Shown here in pieces: positions 15,390 through 64,000 of a DNA stretch of 64,000 nucleotides; the first letter of the stretch is position 1; every line of letters starts with the position of its first letter. The notes under the pieces were generated by a model. The model did no database searches. It had not been told where the DNA came from and saw nothing but the letters and a program-made list of their open reading frames with translations. The DNA comes from Basidiobolus meristosporus CBS 931.73 (Eukaryota; Fungi; Basidiobolomycota), in contig MCFE01000427.1 in the NCBI GenBank assembly GCA_002104905.1, positions 13,098 through 77,097 of the forward strand. The letters are read 5' to 3'. Position numbers and translations under genes: made by a program.

Positions 15390-15941
15390 ATGCGTTTCTT
15401 CTCAGTCAGCCTTGCCTTGGTCGCTTTGACCTCCCTCCTCCTGACCAGCGCCAATGCTGCGTCATTTGAGAAACGCCACGGAAACGAGAAACACGTGGCC
15501 TCTGCGCTTGAGAAACGTCACGGTAACGAGAAACATGTGGATGCTGTACTTGAGAAGCGTCATGGTAACGAGAAACACATCGCGGCGGTTCTTGAGAAAC
15601 GCCATGGCAACGAGAAACATGTGGATGCTGTACTTGAGAAGCGTCACGGCAACGAGAAACACATCGCCGAGCTTGAGAAGCGCCACGGAAATGAGAAACA
15701 CGTAGTAGAGCTCGAGAAGCGCCACGGCAACGAGAAGCATATCGCCGAGCTCGAGAAGCGTCATGGTAACGAGAAACACGTCGCGGCGGTCCTCGAGAAG
15801 CGTCATGGCAACGAGAAGCACGTGGTAGGCCTCGAGAAACGTCACGGTAACGAGAAGCACATTGCTGAACTCGAGAAACGCCATGGCAAGGAGAAGCACG
15901 TGGCCAGCGTGGAGAAGCGACACGGTAATGAGAAACATTAG
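15390..15941 (+). CDS. Kex2-processed repeat protein (KEP) / peptide precursor with 12 HG(N/K)EKH units
   Basis: 183 aa from ATG 15390: signal peptide, then 12 EKR-HGNEKH units (one HGKEKH) with short hydrophobic spacers. Synonymous codon variation between repeats; TATTTAA at 15269. Confidence 0.88.
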   Translation: MRFFSVSLALVALTSLLLTSANAASFEKRHGNEKHVASALEKRHGNEKHVDAVLEKRHGNEKHIAAVLEKRHGNEKHVDAVLEKRHGNEKHIAELEKRHGNEKHVVELEKRHGNEKHIAELEKRHGNEKHVAAVLEKRHGNEKHVVGLEKRHGNEKHIAELEKRHGKEKHVASVEKRHGNEKH

Positions 15942-16304
15942 AGGGCCGCAACCACTAGACCCACACCCAAAGAACCCTCATTTATCACCAGATCCCCCGT
16001 ATCTCACTGGCCTGTATACAGCCATACGGCGAAACCAATAATTATCAAGCAACACCCGAATTAACCCAGAATTCACTATTTGCCCAATAAATTACCCGCT
16101 GTTTATTTCGATCTTGGGTGTGTGCTCGAGTTGATCTGGAACGGTATTTCGGGCTCCAGTCCTTTCATCAACCGGAGCCACTAGTGAGTATCATGATAAG
16201 GGGTGGGGTGAGGTGAGGTGAGGTGGGATGGGTAAAGGAGTAGGAAACAATGTGGCAGGGACAGCAGACTACCTGCCCTGCCTGCGTTCCTCTTCTCTCC
16301 CCTC

Positions 16305-16703
16305 CTAGAGAACTTTTTTGCTCACGAATTGGCCACCGGTAGTCCCCTCACGCACGAAGGTGGGGTCGTTCTTGGCCAACCAATTCTCCAGCAGGGCCAG
16401 GTTGTAGATGTTGGCCTTGAACAGGACATCCAAGAAGTCCCCGACGAAAGGGACCAGTCCGATCACGGCGTCCACGACGACGTTCAACACCATCAGCCCG
16501 ATCAGGGTGACCGGGATGCCGAGCTGGGCGGACATGTAGATCTGGTACAGCGAGATGAGCAAACCGGCAATGTCACCTATCCCGGGGATCAGCCCAATCA
16601 GAGGGTCAAGGCCGATACCAAAGGGCACACCGGGGATCGCATCCATGTAGGAGGCGAAACGGCGGATGTTGTTGAGCAAACGCTGCTTTTCACTGGAGTT
16701 CAT
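16305..16703 (-). CDS. DUF4112 family membrane protein
   Basis: Family-typical motifs GIGLDPLIGLIPGIGD and DAVIGLVPFVGDFLDVLFKAN. Confidence 0.85.
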   Translation of the reverse strand: MNSSEKQRLLNNIRRFASYMDAIPGVPFGIGLDPLIGLIPGIGDIAGLLISLYQIYMSAQLGIPVTLIGLMVLNVVVDAVIGLVPFVGDFLDVLFKANIYNLALLENWLAKNDPTFVREGTTGGQFVSKKVL

Positions 16704-17323
16704 GGAGATGCACAGTGGTGAAGGTCAAGGTGAAGGCGAAGGCGAGGTGGATGGACTTGAACAAGAACCGTAATCCCCAGGATGAATTAGGTCACTACTA
16801 GCATGACTGTCTTCAGGGATGGATTGGTTCGGGTTCGCAGTTAAGCTTCATCCAATCGATGTGGAGAATACCTGACTGGTCTATGGATCAGGATTGGCTA
16901 CGGAAATATCCCATAGATCTCGCTTCGGGTTGCCACCTCTGAAAGACGTAACAAGATAACAGGATCCGCAGAGATAAATGTAGGTGGTGAGCATCTCACA
17001 TACTGATGCCAACTCACCTCGCAACGACAGGGCCAGCGAAACGGCTCTTATCTATCAAGCTGATTCGCCATAGAAAGGAAGGTGAGGCTCAAACGCACGT
17101 GCTACTCCAAATCAATGGCCACTATATTTGGCACAACCGATATGGGACCACAATACTGGCTGGCAGCATCTTTCCGAAACCGTCGATGCCTATTTTATCA
17201 GGCCACGGGTAAAATCTCATTCGAGTCATCCTTGCTCAGGAGGTCCGAGATCCTTTATAAGCGTAGATCAGGGCCTTGCCAACTACTTTTCCACTTCTCC
17301 ACCCCCACCCCCCCCCCGCAAAA

Positions 17324-18800
17324 ATGGTTCTTGAGAGCAATCCCGTCAAGTTAGAGAAGGTCCCTGACGCCAATGGGTTCTTCGGACCGTTCGGCGGCTC
17401 TTTCATTCCGCCGGAGCTCCAGAAACAAATGGACGACATTAATTTCGGGTATACTCGACTTAGCAAGTCCCACGATTTCATCCAAGGTGAGTGCTAGACG
17501 CAGCCCCGGTCGCATTTTCGGTCGGCTGACGTTGTTTCGGTTGATGTAGAACTACGCAGGATCCGCAAGCACTTCCAAGGTCGCCCGACCCCTGTCTATT
17601 ACTGCAAAAACCTCAGTGAGAAGATTGGCGGCGGCCGAATCTATCTGAAGCGAGAGGATCTGAATCACACCGGCGCCCACAAGTTGAACCATTGCATGGG
17701 AGAAGCCCTGGTGGCGAAATACCTGGGCAAGAAAAAGCTGATCGCCGAGACCGGAGCGGTGGGTAGATCCTCGTCACCTGCGCCACCCCTTTGTTCATCC
17801 CGCTAACCATCATCCTCTGCAGGGGCAGCATGGCGTCGCTTTAGCCACGGCAGCGGCCTACTTCGGCCTCGAGTGTGAGATCCACATGGGAGAGGTGGAT
17901 ATTGCCAAGGAGCATCCGAATGTCACCAGAATGAAGATCTTGGGCGCCAAGGTCGTCCCGGCCACCCACGGACTAAAAACGCTCAAGGAGGCGGTGGATT
18001 CCGCATTCGAGGCGTATCTCAAAGATCCAATCGACTCCATCTACTGCATCGGCAGTGTGGTAGGCCCACACCCATTCCCCAAAATGGTGCGCGAGTTTCA
18101 GCATGTGGTGGGCCTGGAGGCACGTGAGCAATATCTGGAGATGACTGGTGAGTGGCGGTTATGCACTGAGTCCAGGATGCAATCTTGACTGACTGTGGTG
18201 TTCAATTAGGGGATCTTCCTGACCATGTTGTCGCATGTGTGGGTGGTGGCTCAAATGCCATTGGAATGTTCACTGCTTTCCTTGAGGATAGCGAAGTTCA
18301 GCTGCACGGAGTGGAGCCAATGGGCAAAGGAACCAAACTTGGTGAACACGCAGCCTCGTTGAGCTATGGCGAGGAAGGAATCATGCACGGTTTCAACTCG
18401 ATCATGCTGAAGGATGAAGCCGGTGAGCCCGCCCCGGTCTACTCTATCGCTTCTGGCTTGGACTATCCCAGCGTAGGTCCAGAGCATGCTTACCTCAACT
18501 CCGTGGGCAGAACCCAAGTTGGTACGGCTAACGACGAGGAGACGCTGCATGCGTTTTTCCAGCTTTCACGACGGGAAGGTAAGGTGGTGGAGTAGCTGAG
18601 TTGCCGGTTGTATGCTAACCGATAGCGTTCTAGGAATCATCCCAGCTCTAGAGTCGGCTCATGCTGTGGCATATGCCATCAAGCTCGCCCGAGAAAACCC
18701 CAATGCCAGCATCTTGGTAAATCTCAGTGGACGTGGTGACAAAGATATAGATTTCGTCATGGAGAAATATGGGGAGTATGCTGACCGCGACGACTATTGA
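17324..18800 (+). CDS. trpB: Stand-alone tryptophan synthase beta chain (exons 17324-17486, 17550-17758, 17823-18147, 18210-18578, 18634-18800)
   Basis: [13 protein letters not shown] (PLP lysine), [50 protein letters not shown]. Four GT-AG introns restore one frame; no TrpA domain. Confidence 0.95.
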
Positions 18801-20235: not shown

Positions 20236-21509
20236 ATAAGTACCCCATAGTAAGTGCCACCTGAGCTTAGTGGAATATGTTGTAAGAGTCTTGAAAATGT
20301 TGGAAGTGATTGGTAAAAAAATAGAATATTGGGTCCCACTTGGTGATTTATTGAATGTAAAAGTAATATTTATACTTTCTCCTGGTCTTGGCCAACCCTA
20401 AACACAGAGTATTTTAAGGAAGCTCCTGAGAGCATGTGTGTAAAGATTGGGGCTGTTTGAACAACTTCAAAATTTCTGATGTTCTGAGCACCTGATATTC
20501 TGGGGAAAATATTCCAGATTTAGACAAGGGACTTAATTAGAATTCTCTGCACCATGTAGACAATGATCTCAGTGACTAATTCAGGTGTGTATTTAGGTGA
20601 AGCTGCAAAATTTGCAACCTATGATATGATTTGGATGCTAGAGGGATCTCCACTTACTAGGCTCATACCAGTAAAGCTGCAGTAAAGATTCTTGTTACAT
20701 CATCAGGGGGCTCAATTCCATGATTTATCTGCTGATCTAAGTGAAGGTAGAATAAATATTCATTTGAGCTATCTACAAAGCTTATATTGTATGTAGAGAA
20801 TAAAACTTTTGGCTGATTAGCTCTATTTGGTTTGCCTGTAGAGAACCTGCAGTTCATAATTCAGCACTTAAACAGGGACAATAAATTTACCCATAACATT
20901 TGTGGATTACTATGAAAGTATTCACCTGGGGTTTAAGTAATATACCTCAGAAGCAGGAACTCCAAGTACCACTGTTGCCAAAGTTGCATATGAGGCTTTG
21001 GATACATATGTTTTTGAGATCTTCTCAAGCATCCTGCTGATGCTTTCTTTGCAAGGACACAGTAAAGTAACAGCTTCTCTCAAGCTTGATGTGTCATCAA
21101 GCAGAAACTGTGCAACCTGCAGGTTCTTTCAGCTATCCTCAGTGTCCTGAAGGTGCCAGAAATAATGATGAGCCATCAAGGCAATAGTGTTTCAACAAGT
21201 TGCAGGCATTAATACCAGTATTATTTTAAAGGGAGCTAAGAGATGTGTCAGTTATAAAGGTACTCCTAACAGTAACACTACATAACACTTCTCCTTCAGC
21301 AAATGCCACAGTAATAGATTGTTGCCTGTGCCAGAGTATCAATGGGTGTATCTATTGAAAGATTTTGATCTTGGCAAACAATTACCAATGCTCAGGCTCA
21401 CTCTGCATGAATACCAGAAGCATTATGCAATTTCCTTTCAACTACAGCATAAAATCTGGTTGGTGCTGACTTGATATTTGGCATTGTAAGTCATCTGTAA
21501 CAGTAAGGG

Positions 21510-36636: not shown

Positions 36637-39600
36637 TGTTGTAAAAATTCGTATTTCCACCTAAATATTCACCTAACTTAGTCACTTAGATCATCACCTT
36701 CAAATCCTAGAGAATACTGACCAAATTCCTTGTTGGGATTTACTTAGAATATTTACCCAGAACATGAAAATTTGATAAGTTGTCCAAACAGCCCCAAACT
36801 TTGCACACATGTTCTTGGGACCTTCCTTAACCTATTCTACGGGTTTGTAATGCCAAGACCATGTAAAAGTATAAATACTACTTTTACATTCAATAAATCA
36901 TTAAGTGAAAACCACATAATCTACTTGTTCTCCCAATCACTTCCAATATCTCCAAGACTCTTACAACAGGTTATGAGCCCCAAGCTGTCACTCTCTGCAA
37001 TGTCTACTACTGCTATTACTGGAATTTTTCCCTCTGCTGAAAAGTTGGATGGATCTAACTACCAAGTGTGGAAGGTGAAGATGAAGATGCTGCTACAAGA
37101 AAGAGGCCTTTGGGATATTGTCATGGGAGAAGAATGCCCTCCTAAAAACATGGGAGAGGAAGCCTTAAAGTACCAGAAGAAAGAACAAAGTGCCTTTAAC
37201 TGCATTTGCCTTAATGTCAAGGACAAATTGCTAATTCAATGCTCAAGAGCAAAAACGGCAAAGAATGCCTGGAAGGCATTAGAAGACACCTACCAGTCAT
37301 GTTCAGCTGCCAAGAAAATGTATCTGAGAAGAAAATTCTTTACTACAAAGATGCTGCCAGGAGAAGAAATGAAAAATCTAATTAACAGAATTACCCTGCT
37401 GGTAGATGAGATGGAATCTGTGGGCGTACCAACTACTGATGAGGATGTGATAGTTACCATCCTGAATAGCCTGACAGACGAGTTTCAGGGCCTTGTATCA
37501 GCCCTAGAGTCCAGAACTGAAGATTTGACCTTAAATTACGTATATGGAAGGCTCCTGGATGAAGAATTAAGAAAATCAAGCGCCAATAAGAAGGAAGAAG
37601 AAAATGCTTTAATAAGCAATGATAACCAACAAAGGAGGTACCCAAGACCCTACAAAGGCAACAACAACCTATTTTGCAACTACTGCAAAAGGAAAGGACA
37701 CACATCAGACCGGTGTTTCAAAAAGAGAGATTATCAGCAAAAGAAGCCTGAATATGGAAATGCTGCAACAACTGAAGATAGACTATTCATATCTGCACTA
37801 AATATGACCACAAACAAGGATTCTCAGACGTGGTATATTGACTCTGGAGCTTCCCAACACTTTACACACCAAAAAGAACTTTTTACCCAATATCAAGAAA
37901 TTCCAATTAAGAAGGTTTTCATGGGTGACAATAGAACACTTGATGCAGTGGGAGAAGGAACTATCCAAGTAAACCTTAGAAGCAGTGAAGGAAGCCATAC
38001 ACTGACCTTTAAAGAAGTACTCTATGTACCAGAAATAGCCAAGAACCTACTCTCTGTAAGCAAGGCCACAGCAGAAGGACTCAGTTTCAGTTTTAACAAT
38101 TCTGGATGCAGGATCACTGATCAAAATGGTGCCCATATTGCTTCGGGCATCAGAGATCAGAATCTATACAAGTTGACTTATATTCCATCATATCTGGAAG
38201 CCAATATAAGTAACTTAAATGAAGAAACACCAATGCTTTGGCACAGGAGATTTGGACACATCAATTTTGATTATTTGCGTAAAATGATCAAAGATCAGCT
38301 AATTTCTGGAGTGAAAATTGATCCCCCAGCTATTTTGGAGCACTGTGAAGCCTGCATATATGGGAAACAAGCCAGACAACCGTTCAAGAGCTCTGGGTTA
38401 ATCAAAACTAAGAAAAAATTAGATCTAATTCACTCAGATCTGTGTGGACCTATGCAAAATTTATCCTTAGGTGGGATGAAGTATTTAATCACTTTTATTG
38501 ATGATTATACAAGATACACATGGGTCTACTTCATGGAGAGAAAGGAAGAAGCTCTGTCTAAGCTCAGGGAGTTTAAAGCCATGGTGGAGAGAGAAACTGG
38601 TGAAAAAATCAAGAAAATACGCTCTGACAATGGTGGAGAATATACCTCAAAACTCTTCATCCACTTCTGCAAAATTCATGGGATAAAGCAAGAGACTACT
38701 GTACCATACTCCCCACAGCAAAATGGAGTAGCAGAACAAGCTAACAGATCAATAATTGATATGGCAAGATCTATGATCCATGATCAAAAATTATCCTATG
38801 ATATTTGGGCGGAATCAGTTGCCACTGCTGTATATCTTAAAAATAGGAGTTATAACAGAATACTTCGTGATTCTACTCCATTTGAAGCATGGTATGGATA
38901 CAGACCAAGTGCAGAACATCTAAGAATATTTGGGTGTACAGCATATGCCAAAAAACTGGCCGGAAATCAGTCAAAATTTGAGCCAAAAAGTGTAAAATGC
39001 ATATTTTTGGGCTACTGCAATGAGAGTAAGGCATACAGACTCTACAATACCAAAGCAAAGAAGCTGATCAAGTCCAGGGATGTGTTGTTTGATGAAAATT
39101 CAAAATTTTCACAAAAAATGACATCAGATGATGACGAAAATTTGATCTCAAGTCCACCAATTGTCAGGATTGAATCAGAGCAAAACAATGAAAATTTTTT
39201 CACTCCAGAGGACTCTACAACCATGGTTCAGCCAGAATCAGTGCCCAGGAATATCCCAGAAGTGATCATTCCAGTATCAAATGCCCGGAGATCCAATCGG
39301 ACAAGAAATAGCCCAAATTACTATATCAATGAGGGTACAAACTTAGCCTATGCCTATTCAGTCCATGTTGATGAACCCCAGACTGTAAAAGAGGCCCTAA
39401 ATAGCCCTCAGACGAAGTTTTGGAGATCTGCAATGACTGAGGAATATCAGGCACTGATGGAAAATCAAACTTGGGACTTAGTCAAATTACCAATCAACCG
39501 AAAATCAATTGGATGCAGATGGGTCTTCAAGACAAAATACAAGGCTGATGGTACAATTGAAAGATACAAAGCAAGACTTGTAGCCAAAGGATACTCTCAA

Positions 39601-41305
39601 ACAAAAGGACTTGACTATACTGAGACCTTTGCACCGGTAGCCAAGTTTAATTCCATCAGATTAATATTGGCTATTGCAGCCAAATATAAGTTTTTTATTC
39701 ATCAAATGGATGTAAAAACTGCATTTTTGAATGGAGAACTTGATGAGGACGTGTATATGGACCAGCCTGATGGGTTTGTTGACCAAGATAACCCCCATTT
39801 GGTCTGCAAGCTTAAAAAGTCACTATATGGTCTCAAACAATCACCGAGAGCCTGGAATTGCAAGATAGATTCTTATTTGGAATCTTTGAGTTTCAAAAGG
39901 AGTAATGCTGACTATAGTATATACTATAAGCCAGATAGAGCAAATCCAGTTCTATTAGCTCTATATGTGGATGATCTTATTATAGCCGCCAATAACCTAG
40001 AAACATTGGAAGAGACTAAATCCAGCCTATCTAAGGAGTTCAAGATGTCCGATCTAGGAGAACTTAGTTACTACTTAGGGATTAAGTTCTCCATAGACAG
40101 AAGTACCCAGACTAGTACCCTAAGTCAATCCAAGTATATTCAAGATATACTAAAGAAGTACAAAATGGAAGACTGTAAACCGGCAGCTACCCCAATGGAG
40201 ACAAACCTTAACTTGGTCAAAACTCAACCAAATCAAGAGAGCTTGGTGCCATCTGAAAGCCCTGACTTTCCTTATCAATCTATGGTCGGCAGTCTGATGT
40301 ATATCATGCTTGGAACATGTCCAGATATCTCATATTCAGTGGGAGTAGTCAGCCAACATAATCAGAATTATGGATCTGATCATATTGCAGCAGTTAAGCG
40401 GATTTTTAGATACCTAAAAGGAACTGCTGATATCTGCTTAAGATACACTTATAAGGATTCAGAACAGGATCTTGTGGGATACTCTGATGCTGATTGGGGA
40501 CGAAATTTGGAAGACAGAAGATCTACCACAGGATACACCTTTCTTTCACTGTAAAGGAGCCATTTCATGGAATTCAAGAAAGCAACCAACCGTAGCACTT
40601 TCCACCACAGAGGCAGAGTATATGGCAGCCTGTGAAGCTACAAAAGAAGCAATGTGGTTAAGAAAGCTCTTTACAGATTTAGGCCTATGTCAAAAAACGC
40701 CTATTACTTTATTTCAAGATAATCAAGGATGTATACAATTAGGTAGAAATCCAACTTTTCATGCTAGAACCAAGCACATAGATATTAGACATCATTTCAT
40801 ACGTGAAGCTATAGAGAATAACTTAGTTAGCTTAGTTTACTGTCCTACAGATGAAATGATTGCAGACATATTTACCAAACCATTAGCTAGAGACAAGTTT
40901 GAATATTTTAGGTCAAAATTAGGACTAGTCAGTATGAACATTTAGCTGAGTGGGAGTGTTGTAAAAATTTGTATTTCCACCTAAATATTCACCTAACTTA
41001 GTCACTTAGATCATCACCTTCAAATCCTAGAGAATACTGACCAAATTCCTTGTCGGGATTTACTTAGAATATTTTCACCAAAATACCAGGTACCCAGAAC
41101 ATGAAAATTCTCAAAGTTGTCCAAACAGCCCCAAACTTTGCACACATGTTCTTGGGACCTTCCTTAACCTATTCTACGTGTTTGTAATGCCAAGACCATG
41201 TAAAAGTATAAATACTACTTTTACATTCAATAAATCATTAAGTGAAAACCACATAATCTACTTGTTCTCCCAATCACTTCCAATATCTCCAAGACTCTTA
41301 CAACA
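36637..41305 (+). mobile_element. Near full-length Ty1/copia LTR retrotransposon (5' LTR 36637-36968, 3' LTR 40957-41305)
   Basis: TG..CA LTRs, TSD ATAAT both sides, PBS GGTTATGAGCCC like Drosophila copia, PPT GAGTGGGAG, gag-PR-IN-RT-RH order. Confidence 0.97.
36973..40945 (+). CDS. Copia gag-pol polyprotein with one frameshift near 40545 in RNase H
   Basis: CNYCKRKGHTSDRC knuckle, WYIDSGAS, WHRRFGH, HSDLCGP, RSDNGGE, QMDVKTAFLNG, YVDD, SDADWG. Frame changes at GYTFL/HCKGAISW. Confidence 0.92.
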
Positions 41306-41432
41306 ATAATTACACTTAGTTATTTCATTAGCTTGTTGCCTAGACTATTTGATATGAGTCTTAGAATACCCTATACAAATTATTTATCAATAATTACTTG
41401 CAATATTGCTCACGCAATAAGCAGATATTTAG

Positions 41433-42112
41433 TGTTGTAAGAGTTTTGGAGATATTGTAAGTGACTGGGAGATAAAGAAAACTATGTTGCCTTAACTTAA
41501 TGATTTATTGAAAGCAAAAGTAATATTTGTACTTCTACATGGTCTGGAAAAAACCATTCCAAATATGCTCAGGAAGGTTGCAAGGTCAGGTTGTTGTAAG
41601 AGTCTTGGAGATATTGGAAGTGATTTGGAGAGCAAGTAGATTAGGTGGTTTTCACTTAATGATTTATTGAATGTAAAAGTAGTATTTATACTTTTACCTG
41701 GTCTTGGCATTACAAACACGTAGAATAGGTTAAGGAAGGTCCCAAGAACATGTGTGCAAAGTTTGGGGCTGTTTGGACAACTTATCAAATTTTCATGTTC
41801 TGGGTAAATATTCTAAGTAAATCCCGACAAGGAATTTGGTCAGTATTCTCTAGGATTTGAAGGTGATGATCTAAGTGACTAAGTTAGGTGAATATTTAGG
41901 TGGAAATACAAATTTCTACAACACAGGTGTGCTAAGTTTGGGGCCGCTTGAGCAACTTTGAAACCTTCATGTTTTGGGTACTTGGTGTTTTGGTGAGAAT
42001 ATTCCAAGTAAATCCCAAAAGAAACTGGGGTAGAATTCTTTAAGGCTTGTAGAAGATGATTCAAGTGACTAAGTTAGGTACGTATTTAGGTGTAGCTATA
42101 AAATCCACAACA
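41433..42112 (-). mobile_element. Older diverged LTR of the copia-related family, interrupted by the solo LTR at 41592
   Basis: TGTTGTAAGAG at 41433 and CACAACA at 42112; both halves are similar to the 332-bp LTR. Confidence 0.65.
41592..41923 (-). mobile_element. Solo LTR (332 bp), copia family
   Basis: Reverse complement of 36637-36968; TSD CAGGT on both sides. Confidence 0.92.
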
Positions 42113-46927: not shown

Positions 46928-47280
46928 TGTTGTAAACATCTGTAAATCCACATAAATAATCATCTAGCTTAGTTACTTACATCAATACTTGGAAATTTTA
47001 CAGAATACTAACCAAATTCCTTGTTGGAATTTACTTGGAATATTTACAACAAAAATATCAGGTACCCAAAACATGAAAATTCTCAAAGTTATCAAAGTAG
47101 CCCAAGGCTTTACACACATGTTCTTGGGATCTTCCTATATATACTCTGTAGGTTTGTTTTGCCAAGATTGTGTCATAGTACAAAACTATGCTTACATTGA
47201 ATATATCATGAAGTGAAAACCACATTATCTACTTGTTCTCCCAATCACTACCAATATCTCCACAAATGTTACCACATAAA
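46928..47280 (+). mobile_element. Diverged copy of copia-related LTR
   Basis: Similarity to the 332/349-bp LTRs (CCAAATTCCTTG, ACATGAAAATTCTCAAAG, TCTACTTGTTCTCCCAATCAC). Boundaries approximate. Confidence 0.6.
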
Positions 47281-55629: not shown

Positions 55630-55905
55630 GGATAATCAAGTGCAGAGTCTTAGAATTGTCAGAGAGTGACAGCAATGGTAGCAGGGAGATTCTGATCTAA
55701 TATTGGTATTGTATACAGCTGGGTTTGGCTATAAAGGCAACAGAGTTGGTTTGCTATACAGGCTAAGCTTGGTGTTCTTAGTAGTGATGAATATGCTAGG
55801 CTTGGGTGGAAACTAGAACAGAATTGCTGAATTCTTATTTTTGCTGAGACACAATCTAAATTTTGTTGAGACACACACTAAACCAAAAGGTTCAGTAAAC
55901 TTAGC
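55630..55905 (-). mobile_element. Truncated 697-bp-family LTR fragment
   Basis: Reverse-complement match to the 3' part of the 697-bp LTR; breaks off at about 55903, immediately before a telomeric-module 3' end. Confidence 0.7.
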
Positions 55906-56179
55906 TCACCCTAAGGAAACTCACCAAGTATTGGTGAAATCTTTATTTGCAGTCTGGATTAAAACAAACATAGAAGCCAGCAGGGATTAAAGTCCCTTAA
56001 ACAATAATTCTTAACTGAATTCAAAGCAGTATCCTAAAGAGTGAAATCCTTATTAAATATCCTGTATCAAGAAGCCAAGTTAGAATTTAGATAACTGGAA
56101 TGCAGAAAGCCTACAAGATAAACTTTGACTTTGTTGCTTCCCAAATATCCTTAATATCAAAGTCTAGTGGAAAATGCAT
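55906..56179 (-). mobile_element. 3' remnant of the telomeric coiled-coil ORF module
   Basis: TCACCAAGTATTGGTGAAATCTTTATTT signature at 55921; minus strand encodes PLDFDIKDIWEATKSKFIL-stop, matching the end of ORF 59598-60398. Confidence 0.75.
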
Positions 56180-57825
56180 TGTTGTGCATCAACATTTAAA
56201 GCTTGGCCAATTTCATTCCATTAGAAAATCTAGTACCCTAACTGATTTTCCCTAACCCAAACATAACTAATCCCTGTTATGGTTTATTTTATCACTTCTC
56301 AGAATCTATTTTTAGCTGTCACACCTGATCAATTTTCATGTGGTCATTACATCCTCAACAGATCTGCTAAGCCTTTCCAAGTGATTAGTCATCTGAGATT
56401 TATCCAACTACTTAGCAGTTGCCAAGACATCAGCTGATTAATGATGCAATTTTTCATTTATCTTATACACCTATCAACACCCCAACAGATTTCAATTAGT
56501 TCAGTCTCTTGGCACTTACTAATGCAACTCAATCAGAAGAGTATAAATAAAGTTTACTGAACCTTTTGGTTTAGTGTGTGTCTCAACAAAATTAAAATTG
56601 TGCCTTAGTAAAATTAAGAATTCCACAATTCCATTCTAGTTTCCACCCAAGCCTAGCACATCCAGTATTCCCAAGAACACCAAGCTAGCCTGTAAAGCAA
56701 ACCAACTCTGTTGCTTTTATAGCCCAACTCAACTATATACAAAACCAATATTAGACCAGAGCTTCTCTGCTAATATTTCTGTCACCCTTGACAAATCTAA
56801 GATTCTGCACTTAGTTATCACTTAGGTTCAGTTAACTCATTCAAGAGTTTTGTTAAACTTTTCTCTTGGATACAACATTTTTTTGTTGAATTCCATTACA
56901 TTCAACAGCATTACAATATGTCCTCAGCAGCAAGCAATCCAAATCTTTCCATGATGGAAGAAGCCCGCAGAAATCAGAAAGAACTAACTGAACAGCTTGA
57001 AAACATCATGCATGAAAGAAACACTTTGATGCTTGAGCACTCAAAGCTTGCCAAGACAAGATCTGACAATCATTGTAGAGATTAACTTCTTGAAGTTATT
57101 TCCAGTTACCAAGATGAAATTGGAATTATCAAAGAAGCCCTGGAGAATGTTGCCATTGTAATTGACAGCATTGAAAATCCACCAGGCCTTGCTCTGCATC
57201 AGCCACCAAGAAGTCATGCCTTTGGATCCTCCAGATCTACCTCTCCCTCTGGACCTACCCTGGTGGCTGTCCCAAGATCCTTGCCTCTTTATGCTGAAGG
57301 AGCCATTGCTATAAAGAATCCTACTGAGTTTCTTTACAAGCTTAGTTATGTCTTAGCTGCACACCAGCTAGACCCTGACACCAATTGGGCTAGACTTCTG
57401 CCTCTCTGTCTCACCATGCAAGATGCTGACTGGGTTGAGGAGAGCATTCCTTCCAATAGTACATGGAAAGTTGCACAGAACCTCTTTTGTGGCCTTTTTG
57501 TAGATCCCCTCAAGAAAGCACATTGAAACTGCAACTTGGGGAAAACTAAAATGCAAAAAGGTGAATCTGTGCAGCACTTCTGTGATAGATTCAAGAGACA
57601 AATGAGACTAGCTGGAGTTAGTGATGACAATCCATTGCTTACTTCTCATTTTCTTTCAAACTTTTCACACCAGCTACAGAGCAATGTTACTATTGTCAAA
57701 GCATGCAACCCTGAACATACCTATCACAAAATCTGAGAGATATGTACACTTACAATCACCATGACTGCAGCTGTTAGCCAGGCTTCAGGCAACTCCATTC
57801 AAGATGCAGCAACTACCAGAAAAGA
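56180..57825 (+). mobile_element. 5' part of a Ty3/gypsy-like element: 697-bp LTR (56180-56877) plus broken gag, truncated by the telomeric array
   Basis: LTR without matching TSD. Interrupted ORF from 56918 with retrotransposon gag-like segments (WARLLPLCL, TWKVAQNLF, MQKGESVQHFCDRFKRQMRLAG). No pol follows. Confidence 0.65.
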
Positions 57826-57891
57826 GGGTTAGTAGGGGGACAGTCACCAACAGGTGAAATCTTTATTTCAGTTGAAACAAAGAAGCCAGCT

Positions 57892-58811
57892 CTACTGTTG
57901 TAGCTTTGATACAACAGTGTGTAGCTGAGGGGAATTTATAGGTAAGTTAATAAGAAGTGATGATAGTTCTTCAGTGCTCAAGACCGTTTTCAGGGGGAAG
58001 GGGGGTAGCAAGAGGGGTAAGAATGATTTGTGAACAACATTAATGAGGGGAATATGATAAGGATTGATATTCATCATAAAGGGAGTGTGCTGCTGCAGAT
58101 ATTGCTGCCAAAGGTCTGTCAAGTACTTCAGGTAGGCCAGCTTGGGTTTTTCTGACTGCAGAATATAGTGAGCAAACTTCTTGACTTCAGGATCTCCAAG
58201 TATAGTTCTCCAGCAGGAGCCAGGTGTTCTGTGGTGTGTTCTCTTCCAGGCCTTAATCAGTGGGTTGTTGCAGTGGTGAAGTCTGAGATATAATCTGGTT
58301 CTAAGGTAGAGTAGTTTGATCTTGTAGGGCATAAACCCAAAAGCACCAAGAATAGCATGTCTGTAGGGGCATTCAGGCAGATGAGACACCAGGGATGTAA
58401 TGCACCATACTGCAAACTTGTCAAGCTTAGTGCAGTCTCTAGAAGTAAGAGAGAGAAGTGGTAAGCCAAATTCCAGGACAGGGAAGACAAACTGCTCAAG
58501 TAGAAGGAGGCAGCTGGGAGCTGAAGTTGTAGGAGGAGTAACAGCCAGTAGCTTGTGGAGTGCTTGTCTTGCCAGGATGATTCTTTTCTTCTGGTGTGCT
58601 CCAGAGTCTAGTCCAGTAGGAAGGAAAGGAAAGCCAAGATATGTAGCAGAAACTTGAGCAGGTAGAGTGCAGTTGTCTAAGCTGATAGTACAGCCCAAAG
58701 GTACTGTCTTTGCAATGGAAAGCTGGAGATTATTCTTCTGCAGATACTGGTGGATGGACTGGGAATCTTGTTGCACATTGGAGGAGGATATTCCAATGCC
58801 ATCAGCAAAGA
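57892..58811 (-). pseudogene. 5'-truncated non-LTR RT ORF, subfamily A (C-terminal part)
   Basis: Begins at PLTLFADG (RT YADD region), continues LSIAKT, ATYLGFPF, FVFPVLEFG; ends KLQQ-stop. Confidence 0.8.
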
Positions 58812-59597
58812 GGGTTAGGGGAGGGAAAGTCACCAAGGTAGATGAAATCTTTATTTGATTTCAGACAAGTCTGACTACAAATAAAGAAGCCTGCTGAGAA
58901 TAGAAGATTCCCAAAGTAAACACTTAGGGGAGGAACATCACCAAGTGGTGAAATCTTTATTTACTTATGACAAGTATCTAAAGAAGCCAAGTTAATCTGA
59001 AGTTATTCCTAGAAAGCTAGGTCTGAGAGATATCTTCCTGGTAAGCCAGGTCTGAGAGTTGGAAGCTGAGTGGTATTATATTTCCTAGTTAGCTAGGTCT
59101 GAGAGTGGTTTCCTGGATAGCCAGGCCTGAGAAGTGAGAATCTGAGTATATCTGAGTTGAGTTGTACTGATTTGCGGTAGCTAATTTGTGGCTGGAATGG
59201 CCAGTAGACTGGGGGAACTGAGAGGAATATCTGGGCAATCACTGGCCAAATTTACCAGGCAAATCTGACCAATTAGCATTTCAAGGATTTCAGCCAATCA
59301 GAGCCTTTACTTTGCCCGATGGTTGATCAAGCCATCTCCCAATGAGCTCACTTCAATTTTTTGATTAAATTTTGTTGGATCCAGGATTTGAACCCACAAC
59401 CATGGGTATGGAAGGGTTAGGGATGACCACAAGGCTAAGTGTTCTTGGTTAGGGTGTAGGTGTTATAGTAAGGGCTAAGAAAAGGTTAGAAGAGTAGGGG
59501 TCTTAGGGGGGATGATAATCACCACAGGGTGAAATCTTTATTTCAATTGTAAATAAAGAAGCCAAGTTTGAATATGAATATCTGAGATAAAGTAAGC

Positions 59598-60398
59598 CTA
59601 CAAGATAAACTTGGACTTTGCTGTATCCCAGATATCCTCAATATCAAAGTTTAGAGGAGAATGTAGCAAAACTGCTTGTTCACTGTAGTATTTCTTGAGG
59701 AAGTTTGTGACTTGAAGGGAAGGAGAGTTTTTCAACAAGCTGGTAAACCTTTTGAGGAGTTCTTTTTCCAGAGAGAATGGTACAAAGAGTGGAATGTCTA
59801 AATGATGTCTGAATATATGCTCTGAGAGCTCCCAATCCAGCATATTTTTGACTTCCTCTGTAAAATCTTCCACAATATCTTTGTCAAGAATGACTTCCAA
59901 GAGATCCCTGGCAATGTACTGAATGTTAATAATCTTGGGCATATGAATACCTAGGTCCTTGAGGTAGTTTCTTTGTTCTGAAATTGGAAGATAGCCAGCA
60001 TTTCTGAAATAGCAAACAGCCCAATTGGCAGTGGGAGGAGTATCAGGGCTGACAGGGAATCTTCTTCTGGCTTTAGGGTGCACTGGCTTAGGTGGCTGTC
60101 TTATTGGGAGAACAGTGGACTTTGGATGAGCTTGAAGTGCTTGGGAGTATGTCTGAGTATGAATGGCAGGAGTTGCTGGTTGCTGACAGTGTTCAGATTG
60201 ACTGGAAGAAGTGCTGGTTGAGGGGTTGCAAGGTAAGGAAGTAGCTGAAAGAGAAGTAGAGAGTGCTGGGTGAAGTTCAGAGAGAGTTTTGAAAAGAACC
60301 TGGATCTGAGATTTCAACATTGAGTTTTCAGCTTCAAGAAGAGAAACTCTTTGTTCAAGGTAAGAAGTCTGTAAAGAGTGAAAGTTGTGTAAAGACAT
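59598..60398 (-). CDS. RT-less ORF1/gag-like protein with N-terminal coiled coil (266 aa) in its own telomeric module
   Basis: LEQRVSLLEAENSMLKSQIQVL heptad pattern, disordered linker, globular C-terminus. TATAAA about 70 nt upstream; own 3' signature at 59503-59560. Confidence 0.65.
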   Translation of the reverse strand: MSLHNFHSLQTSYLEQRVSLLEAENSMLKSQIQVLFKTLSELHPALSTSLSATSLPCNPSTSTSSSQSEHCQQPATPAIHTQTYSQALQAHPKSTVLPIRQPPKPVHPKARRRFPVSPDTPPTANWAVCYFRNAGYLPISEQRNYLKDLGIHMPKIINIQYIARDLLEVILDKDIVEDFTEEVKNMLDWELSEHIFRHHLDIPLFVPFSLEKELLKRFTSLLKNSPSLQVTNFLKKYYSEQAVLLHSPLNFDIEDIWDTAKSKFIL

Positions 60399-60624
60399 GG
60401 AAGAAGTAGATAATAAGAAGAAAAGAGAGGAAAGATCAGAAATTGAAAATCTCAGAATTTATAGATGGATGGACAAGGGTGAAGGATAGATTAATCCAGG
60501 GTTAGGGAAAAATAGTTAAGAAGAAAAGAGAGGGGGTTAGGGGAGGGAAAGTCACCAAGTTGGTGAAATCTTTATTTGAGTTAAGAACTAATCTAAGTAC
60601 AAATAAAGAAGCCAATTAAGAGGT

Positions 60625-62498
60625 CTAGAACCTCTCTAATAAGTAATCTAATTTATGTTTTGTTTCATCTCTAATGTTTGTTTCAATAAAGTAAAGCTCA
60701 TCAGGGGTAAATATAAAATTCAGGGGTTTTGGGGGAAGTACAAATTGTAGATGTTTCTGATCAATATAATCCAAGACTGGAACCCAGCCTGGGATTAGGT
60801 GTAGTAGGAAAGGTGTGTGGACTTGTAAGTAGCTCTGCCACATAGATCTTAGATGGTCCTGAGCTAGTAGTCTTGGTTTCTCAGCTTTTTGAAGTTTTGA
60901 AGCAAGCTCTGTTACTACAGCAGAGCCAAGCAGGGTGTGCCAGCAAGAAGATTTCAGGGAGGAGTTAGATTGAAGCCATTGTTTGATGGAGGGGTGTTGT
61001 GATTTCTGAAGTTTGACTAGGAAGGAAGCCCGGAGATAGATCATTTGGATTTGGTATGGGTAGAGCCCAAAGGCTCCATTAGTTGCATGGATATAGGGAG
61101 ATACTGGAAGATAAGGTACCAAGGATCTGATACACTGATGGAGAAATTTATCCAGGCGGTGAAGTTCTCTGGAGGTTAGGGGTATAATGTGGAGACCAAA
61201 TTCAAGTACCGGCAGTACATACTGCTTCAGGAGTATAGGGATCTTTTGAATTGGAGTGTCTGGAGTGACTACTACCAGAAGCTTTTTGAGAGCCTGTTGG
61301 GCAAGACAGATCCTATTATTCAGGTGGAGCTTTGAGTCAATCCCATGTTGACAAAACGGCAGACCTAGATATATTGCAGTTTGTTGTGGCAGAATGCTAG
61401 TGTTCTGTATAGTTGTAGTGCATCCAATTGGGACTGTCTTGGAAATTGAGAGTGAGAGGTTGTTGGCAGCCAAGTACTTCTCAATGATGGCAGTGTCGCT
61501 ATGGGATTAGGAGTAGCAATCTTGGTATCATCTGCATAGAGAGTTAGTAGTGGATAGGGAGAGTCTGGTGAGGGGCCTTTTGGAAATAAAGGAAAGTCAT
61601 GTAGGAATATCACAAATAGTAAGGGACCTAGAACAGATCCTTGGACTACTCCATTTGGAACCTCATAAGTCTCTGATGTGCAACTTGGATGCAAAATTTT
61701 GGCTGAGTTCTCACAAAATAGAGAATGTACAAGAATGGTCATTGGTAGTGTGGTAACTGCTAATAGCTTTCTCCAAAGCAGAGCTCTGTCCACAGAGTCA
61801 AAGGCTTTAGTAATGTCAAACAGAATGGTTGGCAATGAGAATTGAAGTGAATGATCATGGCTTAGCACTACAGCCATATCCAAGGAGAGTTTGGGCAAGA
61901 AGCCAAACTGAGAAGGATGGAATGGATATAGTTGAGATTGCAAGGATCTTGCTATTATAAGCTCAAAGATTTTCCAGCAGGTTGGTAGGAGTGAAACTGG
62001 CCGGTAAGAACCTGGGAGTGAGTGTTTCCCCTTCCCTTTGTATAAGGGTAATACATTTGCCTGTGACCAGGCCTTTGGGGTAGTCAATTGTTGGGCACCA
62101 ATAGAGTAGAATGGGAGAAGTAAGTGACTCATTTTGGAGTAGCACACCCGGAGTAGATCGTAGGTAATCAAGTCATGTCCAGGTGCAGTATTTGCAGGAA
62201 GCTTCTTTAAAATTTTCTCCAGAAGCTTTGCTGAAACCACAATTGGAGATGTTGGACTGGTGGATATGTTACCAGTATGGTAGAAAGGAGGAGTGGGATG
62301 CATGGTTGAATCAAAGAATATAGGGGCCAGTTTGTCTGGTGATGGTATACTCCTTGCTTGGGGTCTCATGGCTTTGTATACTCTTGATATGGACCTTGTG
62401 GTGGCATTCATATTTACTAAGGGCAAGGTATCCATGATATGAGCCCATAATCTAGTATGCTCAGTGATCTGTAGTGACTTGGAGTAGGAGATTGCAAT
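60625..62498 (-). CDS. Non-LTR (LINE-type) reverse transcriptase, subfamily B; 5'-truncated, one frameshift near 61365-61473
   Basis: APGHD, WSQANVLPLYKGKG, YRPVSLL, QFGF, FDITKAFDSVD, GVVQGSVLGPLLF, YADD. The frame stays open upstream of the listed ATG until the CCCTAA junction. Confidence 0.9.
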
Positions 62499-62563
62499 TT
62501 AGGGGGGGGAGACAGTCACCAACAGGTGAAATCTTTATTTCAGTTGAAACAAAGAAGCCAGCG

Positions 62564-62871
62564 CTACTGTTGTAGCTTTGATACAAGAGTGTGTAGCTGA
62601 GGGGAATTTGTAGGTAAGTTAATAAGAAGTGATGATAGTTCTTCAGTGCTCAAGACACTGTTCAGTGGGAAGGGGGGTAGCAAGAGAGGTAAGAATGACT
62701 TGTGAATAACATTAAAGAGGGGAATGTGATAAGGATTGATATTCATCATAAAGGGAGTGTGCTGCTGCAGATATTGCTGCCAAAGGTCTGTCAAGTACTT
62801 CAGGTAGGCCAGCTTGGGTTTTTCTGACTGCAGAATAAATTCAGCAAACTTCTTGACTTCAGGATCTCCAA
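62564..62871 (-). pseudogene. Short 3' fragment of RT subfamily A
   Basis: Near-identical to the last about 100 codons of 62937-63743; joined through GGGTTAGGG. Confidence 0.85.
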
Positions 62872-62936
62872 GGGTTAGGGGGAGACAGTCACCAACAGGT
62901 GAAATCTTTATTTCAGTTGAAACAAAGAAGCCAGCG

Positions 62937-63800
62937 CTACTGTTGTAGCTTTGATACAAGAGTGTGTAGCTGAGGGGAATTTGTAGGTAAGTTAATAAGA
63001 AGTGATGATAGTTCTTCAGTGCTAAACACACTATTCAGTGGGAAGGGGGGTAGCAAGAGAGGTAAGAATGACTTGTGAACAACATTAATGAGGGGAATGT
63101 GATAAGGATTGATATTCATCATAAAGGGAGTGTGCTGCTGCAGATATTGCTGCCAAAGGTCTGTCAAGTACTTTAGGTAGGCCAGCTTGGGCTTTTCTGA
63201 CTGCAGAATAAATTCAGCAAACTTCTTGACTTCAGGATCTCCAAGTATAGTTCTCCAGCAGGAGTCAGGTGTAGTGTGGTGTGTTCTCTTCCAGGCCTTA
63301 ATCAGTGGGTTGTTGCAGTTGTGAAGTCTGAGGTATAATCTGGTTCTAAGGTAGAGAAGTCTGATCTTATAGGGCATAAACCCAAAAGCACCAAGAATAG
63401 CATGTCTGTAGGGGCATTCAGGCAAATGAGGCACCAAGGAGGTAATGCACCATACGGCAAACTTGTCAAGCTTAGTGCAGTCTCTAGAAGTAAGAGAGAG
63501 AAGCGGTAAGCCAAATTCCAGGACAGGGAAGACAAACTGCTTGAGTAGAAGGAGGCAGCTTGGAGCTGAAGTTGTAGGAGGAGTAACAGCCAGTAGCTTG
63601 TGGAGTGCCTGTCTTGCCAGGATAATTCTCTTCTTCAGGTGTGCTCCAGAGTCTAGTCCAGTAGGAAGGAAAGGAAAGCCAAGATATGTAGCAGAAACCT
63701 GAGCAGGTAGAGTGGAGTTCTCCAAGTTGATGGGAGAGCCCAAAGGTACTGTCTTTGCAATGGAAAGCTGGAGATTATTCTTCTGCAGATACTGGTGGAT
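62937..63800 (-). pseudogene. 5'-truncated RT subfamily A copy capped directly by telomere repeats
   Basis: Paralog of 57892-58811; homology stops at GGTGGAT(63800), then TTAGGG repeats start. Confidence 0.88.
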
Positions 63801-64000
63801 TTAGGGTTAGGGTTAGGGTTAGGGTTAGGGCTAGGGTTAGGGTTAGGGTTAGGGTTAGGGTTAGGGTTAGGGTTAGGGTTAGGGTTAGGTTAGGGTTAGG
63901 GTTAGGGTTAGGGTTAGGGTTAGGGTTAGGGTTAGGGTTAGGGTTAGGGTTAGGGTTAGGGTTAGGGTTAGGGTTAGGGTTAGGGTTAGGGTTAGGGTTA
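63801..64000 (+). repeat. Telomeric (TTAGGG)n tract
   Basis: About 33 TTAGGG units to the window end, with one CTAGGG and one TTAGG variant. Confidence 0.98.

What the first reader, a model, noticed from the sequence alone, without database searches (positions are those of the whole stretch)
57826..64000. Modular LINE-type retroelement system that appears to extend the chromosome end from the telomeric overhang
Seen: seven co-oriented modules, all with 5' ends toward the telomere. Coding RT modules are 5'-truncated at different points, joined through (GGG)TTAG(GG) remnants with no poly(A) and no TSD, and the last is capped by (TTAGGG)n. The RT has LINE/non-LTR motifs (YRPVSLL, D..KAFDSV, GVVQGS.LGP.LF, YADD). 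No RLE or zinc-knuckle motif is visible C-terminal to the RT, and the N-terminus is missing. Known: EN-deficient Penelope-like Athena/Coprina/Terminon elements attach to G-rich overhangs this way, and MoTeR, Cnl1 and HeT-A/TART are telomere-associated non-LTR elements. Inference: the RNA 3' end (...CCCCUAACCC) anneals to the TTAGGG overhang and is copied as new G-strand. A Terminon-like architecture built on a LINE-type RT is not a combination I recognise.
Basis: partly seen in the sequence, partly recalled or inferred. Interest (0 to 1): 0.92.

Follow-up and report, generated by a model that had tools for sequence, protein, structure and literature searches.

The report
Telomere-building LINE community in Basidiobolus
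This chromosome end of the fungus Basidiobolus meristosporus is built from a head-to-tail stack of specialised LINE-type jumping genes and their hitch-hikers, capped by ordinary TTAGGG repeats; it is a fruit-fly-style transposon telomere in an organism that still has telomerase, and I found no paper describing it.

Summary
Window 57826-63800 holds seven co-oriented, mostly 5'-truncated retroelement modules on the minus strand, with 3' ends toward the centromere, capped by 200 bp of TTAGGG. Decayed older remnants reach back to about 55914.

The modules belong to five families: two autonomous LINEs (A, B), two ORF1-only elements (C, D) and a SINE-like element. All share one 3' module of two hairpins plus a C-rich tail ending CCCCUAA(CCC). 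That module occurs 1,473 times in the genome and 0 times in the reversed control. Every sampled copy lies near a contig end in the expected orientation.

Full-length copies elsewhere encode a conserved APE-fold endonuclease (best PDB match TRAS1 EN), translated after ORF1 across an in-frame UGA-CUA.

Even so, 53 of 57 canonical junctions keep 7 or fewer telomeric letters. Arrays also sit directly on unique DNA. Both argue against SART/TRAS-like nicking inside the ~200-bp telomere tracts. They favour priming from short or uncapped G-strand ends, in competition with telomerase (TERT is present).

This is a new variant of a known kind. The scan has flagged the same system on many other pieces of this genome. 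I found no paper on it in the library searched.

The parts
55914..55989 (-).
   Evidence: Signature regex hit at 55921. BLASTN gives 76-91% identity to the D/B/S 3' modules. Sequence read.
56038..56176 (-). Decayed remnant of a family-C-like element (79% identity)
   Evidence: BLASTN.
57826..58811 (-). Module 1: family A LINE, 3' 981 bp (ORF2 residues 615-922), the oldest A copy in the array (95.1% to a terminal A copy). It is joined to a broken gag-like ORF through GGGTTAG.
58812..58923 (-). Module 2: family D (ORF1-only family), 3' 117 bp only
   Evidence: BLASTN 94.9% to L038 family D.
58924..59448 (-). Module 3: non-coding SINE-like element (~525 bp). It has the shared 3' module, internal 24-nt repeats and a head containing GGTTCAAATCC and CCCTAACCC.
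   Evidence: (family D5 repeats). The same 5' end recurs at junctions in L033, L037, L038 and L029. ARAGORN and Rfam do not call a tRNA.
59449..59502 (.). Degenerate telomere-like filler between modules 3 and 4
   Evidence: Read directly.
59503..60531 (-). Module 4: family C, an ORF1-only element (266-aa ORF at 59598-60398). The protein has a coiled coil, a disordered linker and a conserved C-terminal domain homologous to ORF1 of the autonomous LINEs.
   Evidence: (E 1e-11 to family B ORF1).
60532..62497 (-). Module 5: family B LINE, 3' 1960 bp (ORF2 residues 327-949, RT domain), 98.8% to a terminal B copy, with a frameshift near 61497-61500
62498..62871 (-). Module 6: family A, 3' 370 bp (99.2%)
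62872..63800 (-). Module 7: family A, 3' 923 bp (ORF2 residues 636-922, 99.1%), the terminal element
63801..64000 (+). Telomerase-type cap, (TTAGGG)n, 200 bp to the contig end
   Evidence: The window end is the contig end.
60537..60612 (-). Example of the shared 3' module. Hairpin 1 pairs CUUCUUUAUUU with AAAUAAAGA. Hairpin 2 pairs UCACC with GGUGA. A single-stranded C-rich tail ending CCCCUAACCC follows.
   Evidence: z -4.0; same two hairpins in 9 sequences.

Best explanation
This is a community of telomere-specialised non-LTR retrotransposons. Two autonomous LINE families (A and B) encode ORF1, an in-frame UGA-CUA, an APE-fold endonuclease and an RT. Two ORF1-only families (C and D) and a SINE-like element are non-autonomous.

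All five share a 3' RNA module of two hairpins followed by a single-stranded C-rich tail ending CCCCUAA(CCC). The A/B reverse transcriptase presumably recognises this module (inferred).

Most likely mechanism (inferred):
- The tail lies against, or next to, a G-strand 3' end that has lost most or all of its TTAGGG tract.
- Reverse transcription starts precisely at the UAA and runs outward. It often aborts, which gives the 5' truncations.
- The new 3' end is then either seeded by telomerase (GGG, then TTAGGG...) or taken by another element RNA. In the end it is stabilised by a ~200-bp TTAGGG cap.

Repetition builds co-oriented head-to-tail arrays with the oldest copies inside. The conserved endonuclease is not explained by this model. 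It may process ends or serve a minor internal-nicking pathway.
For: Shown:
- Every signature lies in the expected orientation: 75 of 75 at right ends on +, 2 of 2 at left ends on -.
- In contigs of known length, 14 of 14 signature sites lie within 18.3 kb of an end.
- All 8 contig ends that reach telomere carry arrays under a 190-214-bp cap.
- Of 57 canonical junctions, 53 keep 7 or fewer telomeric letters upstream (0 letters: 17; 1-2: 11; 3-4: 17; 6-7: 8). Under uniform nicking in a 200-nt tract the probability is 3e-69.
- Arrays join unique DNA with 0-7 telomeric letters, seen at C1336, C458, C1 and in the window.
- Caps and inter-element remnants begin in the same phases, (A)GGG or TTAGGG.
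- 25 family-B 3' ends on 25 contigs have 25 different flanks, so they are independent events.
- Terminal B copies are 99.9% identical with intact 949-aa frames, which indicates recent activity.
- The window shows an age gradient of 79%, then 95%, then 99% going outward.
- The 3' module is shared by all families and by 60-80%-identical relatives in other samples, which are also head-to-tail and end in CCCTAACCCTAA.
- The start is precise: TTA in 57 of 67 junctions, with no T-runs.
- TERT is present.
- The G-rich strand of the array matches the telomere G-strand, with GC skew +0.24 to +0.37.
Against: - The APE-fold endonuclease is complete and conserved across families at 40-62% identity (N, Y, D-N, D and S-D-H kept; the catalytic E is replaced by D in all five clade sequences that cover that position). 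A purely end-primed element should not need it.
- The junction TTAGGG could belong to the primer and not to the element. In that case every insertion used at least one telomeric repeat.
- No RNA data could be obtained, so the RNA 3' end and its poly(A) status are unknown.
- The whole-genome tabulation of distances to contig ends could not be finished because genome access ended.
- The age gradient is clear only in this window.
- One identical junction on two contigs shows that recombination also moves array segments.
Confidence: 0.6

Rival explanations
1. SART/TRAS-like mode. The APE endonuclease nicks the G-strand of duplex telomeric repeats at a defined site and the nick primes reverse transcription. 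The arrays would then be site-specific insertions into the telomere tract, not additions to the end.
For: - A conserved APE-fold endonuclease whose best PDB match is the TRAS1 telomere-specific endonuclease (1wdu, E 3.4e-11).
- Catalytic motifs are conserved.
- 29 of 57 canonical junctions have at least GGG upstream. If the junction TTAGGG is counted as target, all 57 have at least one repeat.
Against: - Upstream remnants are almost always 1.5 repeats or fewer although caps are ~200 bp (P 3e-69 for uniform nicking).
- SART1 needs at least 3 repeats and a poly(A) tail (PMC7265360). MoTeR-like FoTeRs keep 3-7 repeats at the 3' side (PMC12857005).
- Arrays abut unique DNA with 0-7 telomeric letters.
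- 10 of 67 junctions lack even a full TTA.
- The catalytic Glu is Asp in this clade.
Confidence: 0.22
2. The arrays spread mainly by recombination between chromosome ends (break-induced replication or gene conversion, ALT-like), and retrotransposition is only ancient.
For: An identical junction occurs on contigs C539 and C2 (L012 and L034). Tandem short A modules share the same truncation point in L034.
Against: - 25 of 25 family-B 3' ends have different flanks.
- Truncation points differ copy by copy.
- Many copies are 99.9% identical with intact frames on different contigs.
- Junctions have a precise TTA start.
Confidence: 0.1
3. One reading: an endonuclease-deficient, Terminon/Athena-like system built on a LINE RT.
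For: The 3' tail is complementary to the telomere, copies are 5'-truncated and capped by telomeric repeats, and inter-element telomeric stretches are short.
Against: - Full-length ORF2 has an APE-fold domain with pLDDT 85.7.
- No Penelope features or hammerhead ribozymes were found.
- The RT matches L1 ORF2p at E 9e-13 and R2 only at E 0.1.
Confidence: 0.05
4. Assembly artefact or a chance pattern.
For: Repeats at contig ends are a common place for misassembly. The signature is 10:1 biased to the + strand, which points to some assembly-orientation effect.
Against: - More than 100 contigs show the same structure with unique junctions.
- Independent assemblies from other samples show the same 3' module and head-to-tail joins.
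- The reversed control pattern gives 0 hits against 1,473.
Confidence: 0.01

Closest known systems
Drosophila HeT-A / TART / TAHRE (HTT) telomere arrays
   Same: Both form head-to-tail arrays with 3' ends toward the centromere. Both are a mixed community of autonomous elements (an endonuclease-bearing LINE) and gag/ORF1-only partners. In both, chromosome ends are extended from the terminal 3' OH, broken ends are healed, and the strands are strongly asymmetric in composition.
   Different: Basidiobolus keeps TERT and caps every array with ~200 bp of TTAGGG. Its elements end in a telomere-complementary CCCCUAA tail with a precise start, where the fly elements end in poly(A). It also has a SINE-like member. 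The lineage is fungal and unrelated by descent as far as tested.
Bombyx/Tribolium SART and TRAS (R1 clade)
   Same: Both are APE-type LINEs specialised for telomeres in a species that has telomeric repeats. The TRAS1 endonuclease is the best structural match. Both have a 3' UTR stem-loop that sets the start of reverse transcription.
   Different: SART1 needs at least 3 repeats and poly(A) and inserts inside repeat tracts (PMC7265360). Here remnants are at most about 1.5 repeats, there is no poly(A) and no zinc knuckles, and ORF1 and ORF2 are joined by an in-frame UGA.
Athena / Coprina / Terminons (endonuclease-deficient Penelope-like elements; Gladyshev and Arkhipova 2007, from my own knowledge since the paper is not held)
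   Same: Both have RNA 3' ends complementary to the telomeric repeat, short telomeric stretches between 5'-truncated copies, and caps of telomeric repeats.
   Different: Those elements have Penelope-type RTs and no endonuclease. These have a LINE RT plus a conserved APE-fold domain and ORF1.
MoTeR / FoTeR / Cnl1 (fungal telomeric non-LTR elements)
   Same: All are fungal non-LTR elements found at TTAGGG telomeres.
   Different: From my own knowledge those are CRE-like elements carrying a restriction-like endonuclease. They keep 3-7 telomeric repeats at the 3' side and are described as destabilising ends. The Basidiobolus elements are APE-type, form multi-family arrays at every sampled end, and share a dedicated 3' module.
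Endonuclease-independent L1 insertion at dysfunctional telomeres (Morrish et al. 2007, from my own knowledge)
   Same: In both, an APE-type LINE RT uses an uncapped chromosome end as primer.
   Different: That is an induced laboratory phenomenon in repair-deficient cells. Here it would be the elements' normal, specialised niche.

Membership tests
APE-type non-LTR (LINE) retrotransposon | LINE-type reverse transcriptase domain | tested here: met
   Pfam RVT_1 at E 1.9e-19 to 2.6e-25. L1 ORF2p matches at E 9e-13 in the PDB sequence search.
APE-type non-LTR (LINE) retrotransposon | N-terminal apurinic/apyrimidinic-like endonuclease | tested here: met
   Weak Pfam hits to Exo_endo_phos_2 and Exo_endo_phos (E 3e-4 and 7e-3). 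The motifs N, Y, GD.N, D and SDH align to canonical LINE endonucleases, but the catalytic E is D. The AF2 model has pLDDT 85.7. Foldseek's best hit is TRAS1 EN at 3.4e-11, with APE1 at 1e-10. The domain is absent from the window's own copies only because they are 5'-truncated.
APE-type non-LTR (LINE) retrotransposon | ORF1 upstream of ORF2; frequent 5' truncation | tested here: met
   ORF1 of 437-500 aa is present in relatives and the ORF1 C-terminus in this genome's copies. Truncation points are listed.
APE-type non-LTR (LINE) retrotransposon | poly(A) or simple-repeat tail and target-site duplications | tested here: not met
   The 3' end is CCCCTAA with a precise start, no A or T runs and no duplications. 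Some recognised LINE clades also lack poly(A), so this does not exclude membership.
Named LINE clade (Jockey, I, R1, Tad1, L1 and others) | placement in an RT phylogeny with curated reference elements | not testable with these tools
   No labelled reference sequences were available. The nearest non-Basidiobolus proteins are about 35% identical APE+RT proteins carrying PF14529, mostly from arthropods or unlabelled.
Endonuclease-deficient Penelope-like elements (Athena / Coprina / Terminon) | no endonuclease domain | tested here: not met
   An APE-fold domain is present and conserved.
Endonuclease-deficient Penelope-like elements (Athena / Coprina / Terminon) | Penelope-type RT and hammerhead-ribozyme-bearing terminal repeats | tested here: not met
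   The architecture is APE+RT with ORF1. An Rfam scan of 57800-63800 at E up to 0.1 found no hammerhead.
Endonuclease-deficient Penelope-like elements (Athena / Coprina / Terminon) | 3' end complementary to the telomere; 5'-truncated copies capped by telomeric repeats | tested here: met
SART/TRAS-type telomeric-repeat-specific LINEs | insertion inside repeat tracts, flanked by several repeats on the 3' side; poly(A) required | tested here: not met
   53 of 57 junctions have 7 or fewer telomeric letters and there is no poly(A). The SART1 requirements are taken from PMC7265360.
SART/TRAS-type telomeric-repeat-specific LINEs | R1-clade zinc knuckles in ORF1 and the ORF2 C-terminus | tested here: not met
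   There is no Pfam zinc-knuckle hit. Only two invariant Cys lie C-terminal to the RT.
Drosophila-type retrotransposon telomere (HTT) | terminal head-to-tail arrays, 3' ends proximal, gag-only plus autonomous partners | tested here: met
Drosophila-type retrotransposon telomere (HTT) | telomerase and short telomeric repeats absent | tested here: not met
   The TERT RBD scores above the Pfam cut-off and the T-motif is visible. All 8 ends that reach telomere carry 190-214-bp TTAGGG caps.
MoTeR / FoTeR / Cnl1 (CRE-like) | restriction-like endonuclease C-terminal to the RT | tested here: not met
   No domain is detected C-terminal to the RT, and an APE domain sits at the N-terminus instead. R2 matches only at E 0.1.

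The most novel reading that the evidence does not exclude
The elements are a working second telomere-maintenance system. Whenever a Basidiobolus chromosome end loses its short TTAGGG cap or breaks, element RNPs whose RNA tail mimics a telomerase template re-extend it and hand it back to telomerase. Full-length elements even carry CCCTAACCC motifs near their 5' ends that could act as built-in landing pads. This end-healing capacity could be what lets the fungus keep a karyotype of very many small chromosomes. The conserved Glu-to-Asp APE domain would then have been re-purposed for end processing instead of target nicking.
Probability: 0.25. Interest if true: 0.9.

Novelty: new variant of a known kind. 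Interest (0 to 1): 0.78.

Why it matters
Telomere-specialised retrotransposons are known from flies (without telomerase), silkworm, Giardia, Chlorella, rotifers and a few ascomycetes and basidiomycetes.

Here an early-diverging fungus shows a full fly-like community of autonomous LINEs, ORF1-only partners and a SINE-like element, on every sampled chromosome end. It coexists with telomerase. Its elements carry a telomerase-template-like RNA tail on an endonuclease-bearing LINE.

That state lies between 'telomerase only' and 'transposons only'. It makes testable the old idea that telomerase and retroelement reverse transcriptases can share or exchange the job of end maintenance.

It also poses a concrete puzzle: why does an end-adding element keep a conserved endonuclease? 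And it suggests a possible explanation for how a genome with very many small chromosomes stays stable.

The proteins are annotated only as 'hypothetical protein' in B. meristosporus CBS 931.73, and I found no paper on the system.

Tried and rejected
- RNA evidence for the transcript 3' end: no RNA run was listed.
The distance statistics therefore rest on 9 contigs of known length and 40 loci.
- tRNA origin of the SINE-like head (a lead from earlier notes): ARAGORN and Rfam find nothing. Only a B-box-like GGTTCAAATCC is visible.
- ORF1 fold: the AF2 model shows a coiled coil, a disordered linker, a beta-alpha-beta-beta-alpha-beta domain and helices. Foldseek gives no significant PDB match, so 'RRM-like' remains a resemblance only.
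- The metagenome scan found only distant generic LINEs.
- The age-order test across arrays was ambiguous outside this window, because family A copies all sit at 98-99%.
- Pfam on ATG-delimited ORFs of the TERT locus gave nothing because the exons are small. The RBD hits and the T-motif stand.
- An RT phylogeny against named LINE clades, CRE elements and Penelope-like elements was not possible without labelled references.
- The 'unique gene' I first saw next to an element in L003 turned out to be the zinc-ribbon N-terminus of a full-length ORF1.


Full report
**What is there.** The window is the right end of contig C732 of an 89.5-Mb, 1,366-contig assembly. Other agents of this scan name the organism as Basidiobolus meristosporus. 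I confirmed this independently: the closest named proteins are 'hypothetical protein K493DRAFT_...' of B. meristosporus CBS 931.73. The last 200 bases are (TTAGGG)n.

Inside the cap lie seven modules, all with the sense strand on the minus strand:
- family A, 57826-58811;
- family D, 58812-58923;
- a non-coding SINE-like element, 58924-59448;
- family C, 59503-60531;
- family B, 60532-62497;
- family A, 62498-62871;
- family A, 62872-63800.

The RT-coding modules are cut at ORF2 residues 615, 327, 816 and 636. Module B has a frameshift near 61497. Decayed remnants of the same kind lie further in, at 55914-55989 and at 56038-56176 (79% identity), separated from the array by other repeats and a broken gag-like ORF. 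Nothing element-like occurs in window 1-55900.

**Not chance, and genome-wide.** All families share one 3' signature. On the plus strand it reads TTAGGGG..TCACC-loop-GGTGAAATCTTTATTT. It occurs 1,340 times forward and 133 times reverse in the genome, against 0 for the reversed control.
- The RT ORF finds more than 115 copies. These fall into family B (97% identical, open frames up to 949 aa) and family A (56% identical, 922 aa).
- Six further contigs that I fetched all end in about 200 bp of TTAGGG with such arrays underneath.
- In contigs of known length, 14 of 14 signature sites lie within 18.3 kb of an end.
- Across 40 loci the orientation is always 3' end inward: 75 of 75 at right ends and 2 of 2 at left ends.

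I could not finish a whole-genome table because genome access ended.

**What the elements are.** Full-length or nearly full-length copies at other ends show ORF1 and ORF2 in one reading frame, separated by a single TGA followed by CTA. This holds in both families and in relatives from other samples (TGA-CTA or TGA-CTC). ORF2 has no start codon of its own in this genome's copies. Stop-codon readthrough is the likely way it is made (inferred).

ORF2 has a LINE RT and an N-terminal domain that the window's truncated copies lack:
- Family A gives weak Pfam hits to Exo_endo_phos_2 and Exo_endo_phos.
- Aligned with canonical LINE endonucleases it keeps the catalytic N, Y, GD.N, D and SDH motifs. The metal-binding Glu is Asp in all five clade sequences that cover that position.
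- AlphaFold models the domain at pLDDT 85.7.
- Foldseek's best PDB match is the endonuclease of TRAS1, the silkworm telomere-specific LINE (E 3.4e-11), followed by APE1.

No domain or zinc knuckle follows the RT. The family is a distinct lineage. In-clade proteins are at least about 49% identical in the RT, and the next relatives drop to about 35%.

ORF1 has a zinc-ribbon-like N-terminus, a coiled coil and a conserved ~165-residue C-terminal domain. Families C and D encode only a short ORF1 homologue (E 1e-11), in the manner of HeT-A. The fold search for ORF1 was inconclusive.

**The shared 3' module.** In every family, and in relatives, the last ~80 nt of the RNA fold into the same two hairpins, followed by a single-stranded C-rich tail ending CCCCUAA, often with CCC after it. 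Shuffle z-scores range from -1.3 to -4.1. RNAalifold recovers both stems in nine sequences, with compensatory changes at two pairs. The remaining pairs show no compensatory change: ten are invariant, one varies only A-U to G-U, and three are broken in one or two sequences. The evidence for structure is therefore conserved arms around variable loops, more than covariation. An AAUAAA lies in hairpin 1.

**Mechanism.** I collected 67 distinct junctions. The cDNA always starts at the same place: TTA in 57, TA in 8 and A in 2, and never with a T-run. Either the RNA has no poly(A) or the RT ignores it.

The telomeric letters in phase before that TTA number 0 in 17 junctions, 1-2 in 11, 3-4 in 17, 6-7 in 8, and 10 to 24 in 4. 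With caps of about 200 nt, uniform nicking inside the tract would give 7 or fewer letters about 4% of the time. Observing 53 of 57 has P about 3e-69.

Where arrays meet unique DNA there are only 0-7 telomeric letters, so no relic of an old telomere tract remains. This is seen at C1336, C458, C1 and in the window. Caps and inter-element remnants begin in the same phases, (A)GGG or TTAGGG.

For comparison, SART1 needs at least three repeats and a poly(A) tail, and FoTeRs keep 3-7 repeats.

The simplest reading is that elements are copied onto G-strand 3' ends carrying little or no telomeric DNA. These would be eroded, broken or freshly made ends, where element RNAs compete with telomerase. Telomerase finally installs the cap. 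TERT is present.

Other evidence fits this reading:
- 25 family-B 3' ends on 25 contigs have 25 different flanks.
- Terminal B copies are 99.9% identical with intact frames, so the process is retrotransposition and it is recent.
- The window shows the expected age order of 79%, 95% and 99% going outward. Other arrays are uninformative on this point.
- One junction shared by two contigs shows that recombination also shuffles arrays.

**What does not fit.** A conserved, apparently catalytic endonuclease is unexplained by pure end-priming. I therefore keep a SART/TRAS-like targeted-nick model at about 0.2. The junction TTAGGG could belong to the primer, in which case each event used one or two repeats. 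No RNA data were available.

**Comparison and novelty.**
- The system works most like the Drosophila HeT-A/TART/TAHRE arrays, but with telomerase present and a telomere-complementary tail in place of poly(A).
- It shares junction anatomy with Athena/Coprina Penelope-like elements, but it has an APE endonuclease and a LINE RT.
- It shares the APE domain with SART/TRAS, but not their insertion pattern.
- It differs from the fungal MoTeR, FoTeR and Cnl1 elements in endonuclease type and array organisation.

Searches of the paper library found nothing on Basidiobolus telomeric elements. A 2023 survey of telomeric retrotransposons names MoTeR1 as the only fungal example in the passages I read. I rate the system a new variant of a known kind.

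The same system has been flagged many times by this scan on other pieces of this genome. I re-tested the points I reuse.

Noticed in passing
L036:5576-5578 and L037:5307-5309 (minus strand); relatives L041, L042, L047: ORF1 and ORF2 are in the same frame, separated by one TGA followed by CTA (CTC in one relative). ORF2 lacks its own ATG before the endonuclease motifs in this genome's copies. Stop-codon readthrough is the likely route.
   Followed up: partly
L003:270-290; window 60497-60510; window 59413-59425: Each full-length family carries a CCCTAACCC-type telomeric motif near its 5' end: in the A/B-type 5' UTR, in the C/D 5' UTR and in the SINE-like head. In the cDNA this puts GGGTTAGGG close to the new chromosome end, a possible landing pad for telomerase or for the next element.
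   Followed up: no
genome-wide: The 3' signature is 10:1 biased to the + strand (1340 against 133). Most arrays therefore sit at the right ends of contigs. This looks like an assembly-orientation effect, or contigs with only one assembled telomere. It remains unexplained.
   Followed up: no
window 55866-55900 and 56552-56590; 56918-57736: There is an inverted repeat pair, and gag-like and coiled-coil ORFs lie on the + strand between the old remnants and the current array. This looks like another retroelement that landed in an older array and was later broken and healed at 57825.
   Followed up: no
window 8853-9967, 20278-20599, 36637-36974, 40720-42092, 46928-47276: A dispersed ~350-590-bp repeat is also present near the end of contig C1336 (L036:1-593, up to 98.8% identity).
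   Followed up: no
window 12001-18000: A GC-rich island (0.53-0.55, against about 0.40 elsewhere) was not examined.
   Followed up: no
L019:500-600: A family D module is truncated to only about 41 nt (hairpin 2 plus tail) and has a family B element attached to it. This shows how early reverse transcription can abort.
   Followed up: no
L012:1-280 and L034:715-994: An identical element junction and flank occur on two contigs (C539 and C2). They are either duplicated subtelomeres or haplotigs.
   Followed up: partly
L041-L047 (ENA ERZ27274739; Logan ERR14042375, ERR14042384, ERR14042393, ERR14127404, ERR14656578): Elements 48-80% identical in ORF2, carrying the same 3' module and head-to-tail joins, occur in assemblies of other samples. 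They are presumably related Basidiobolus species. L047 ends in an Illumina adapter.
   Followed up: partly
window 57826-64000: The array's + strand is strongly G-rich (GC skew +0.24 to +0.37; sense-strand G only 13-17%). It has the same polarity as the telomeric G-strand.
   Followed up: partly
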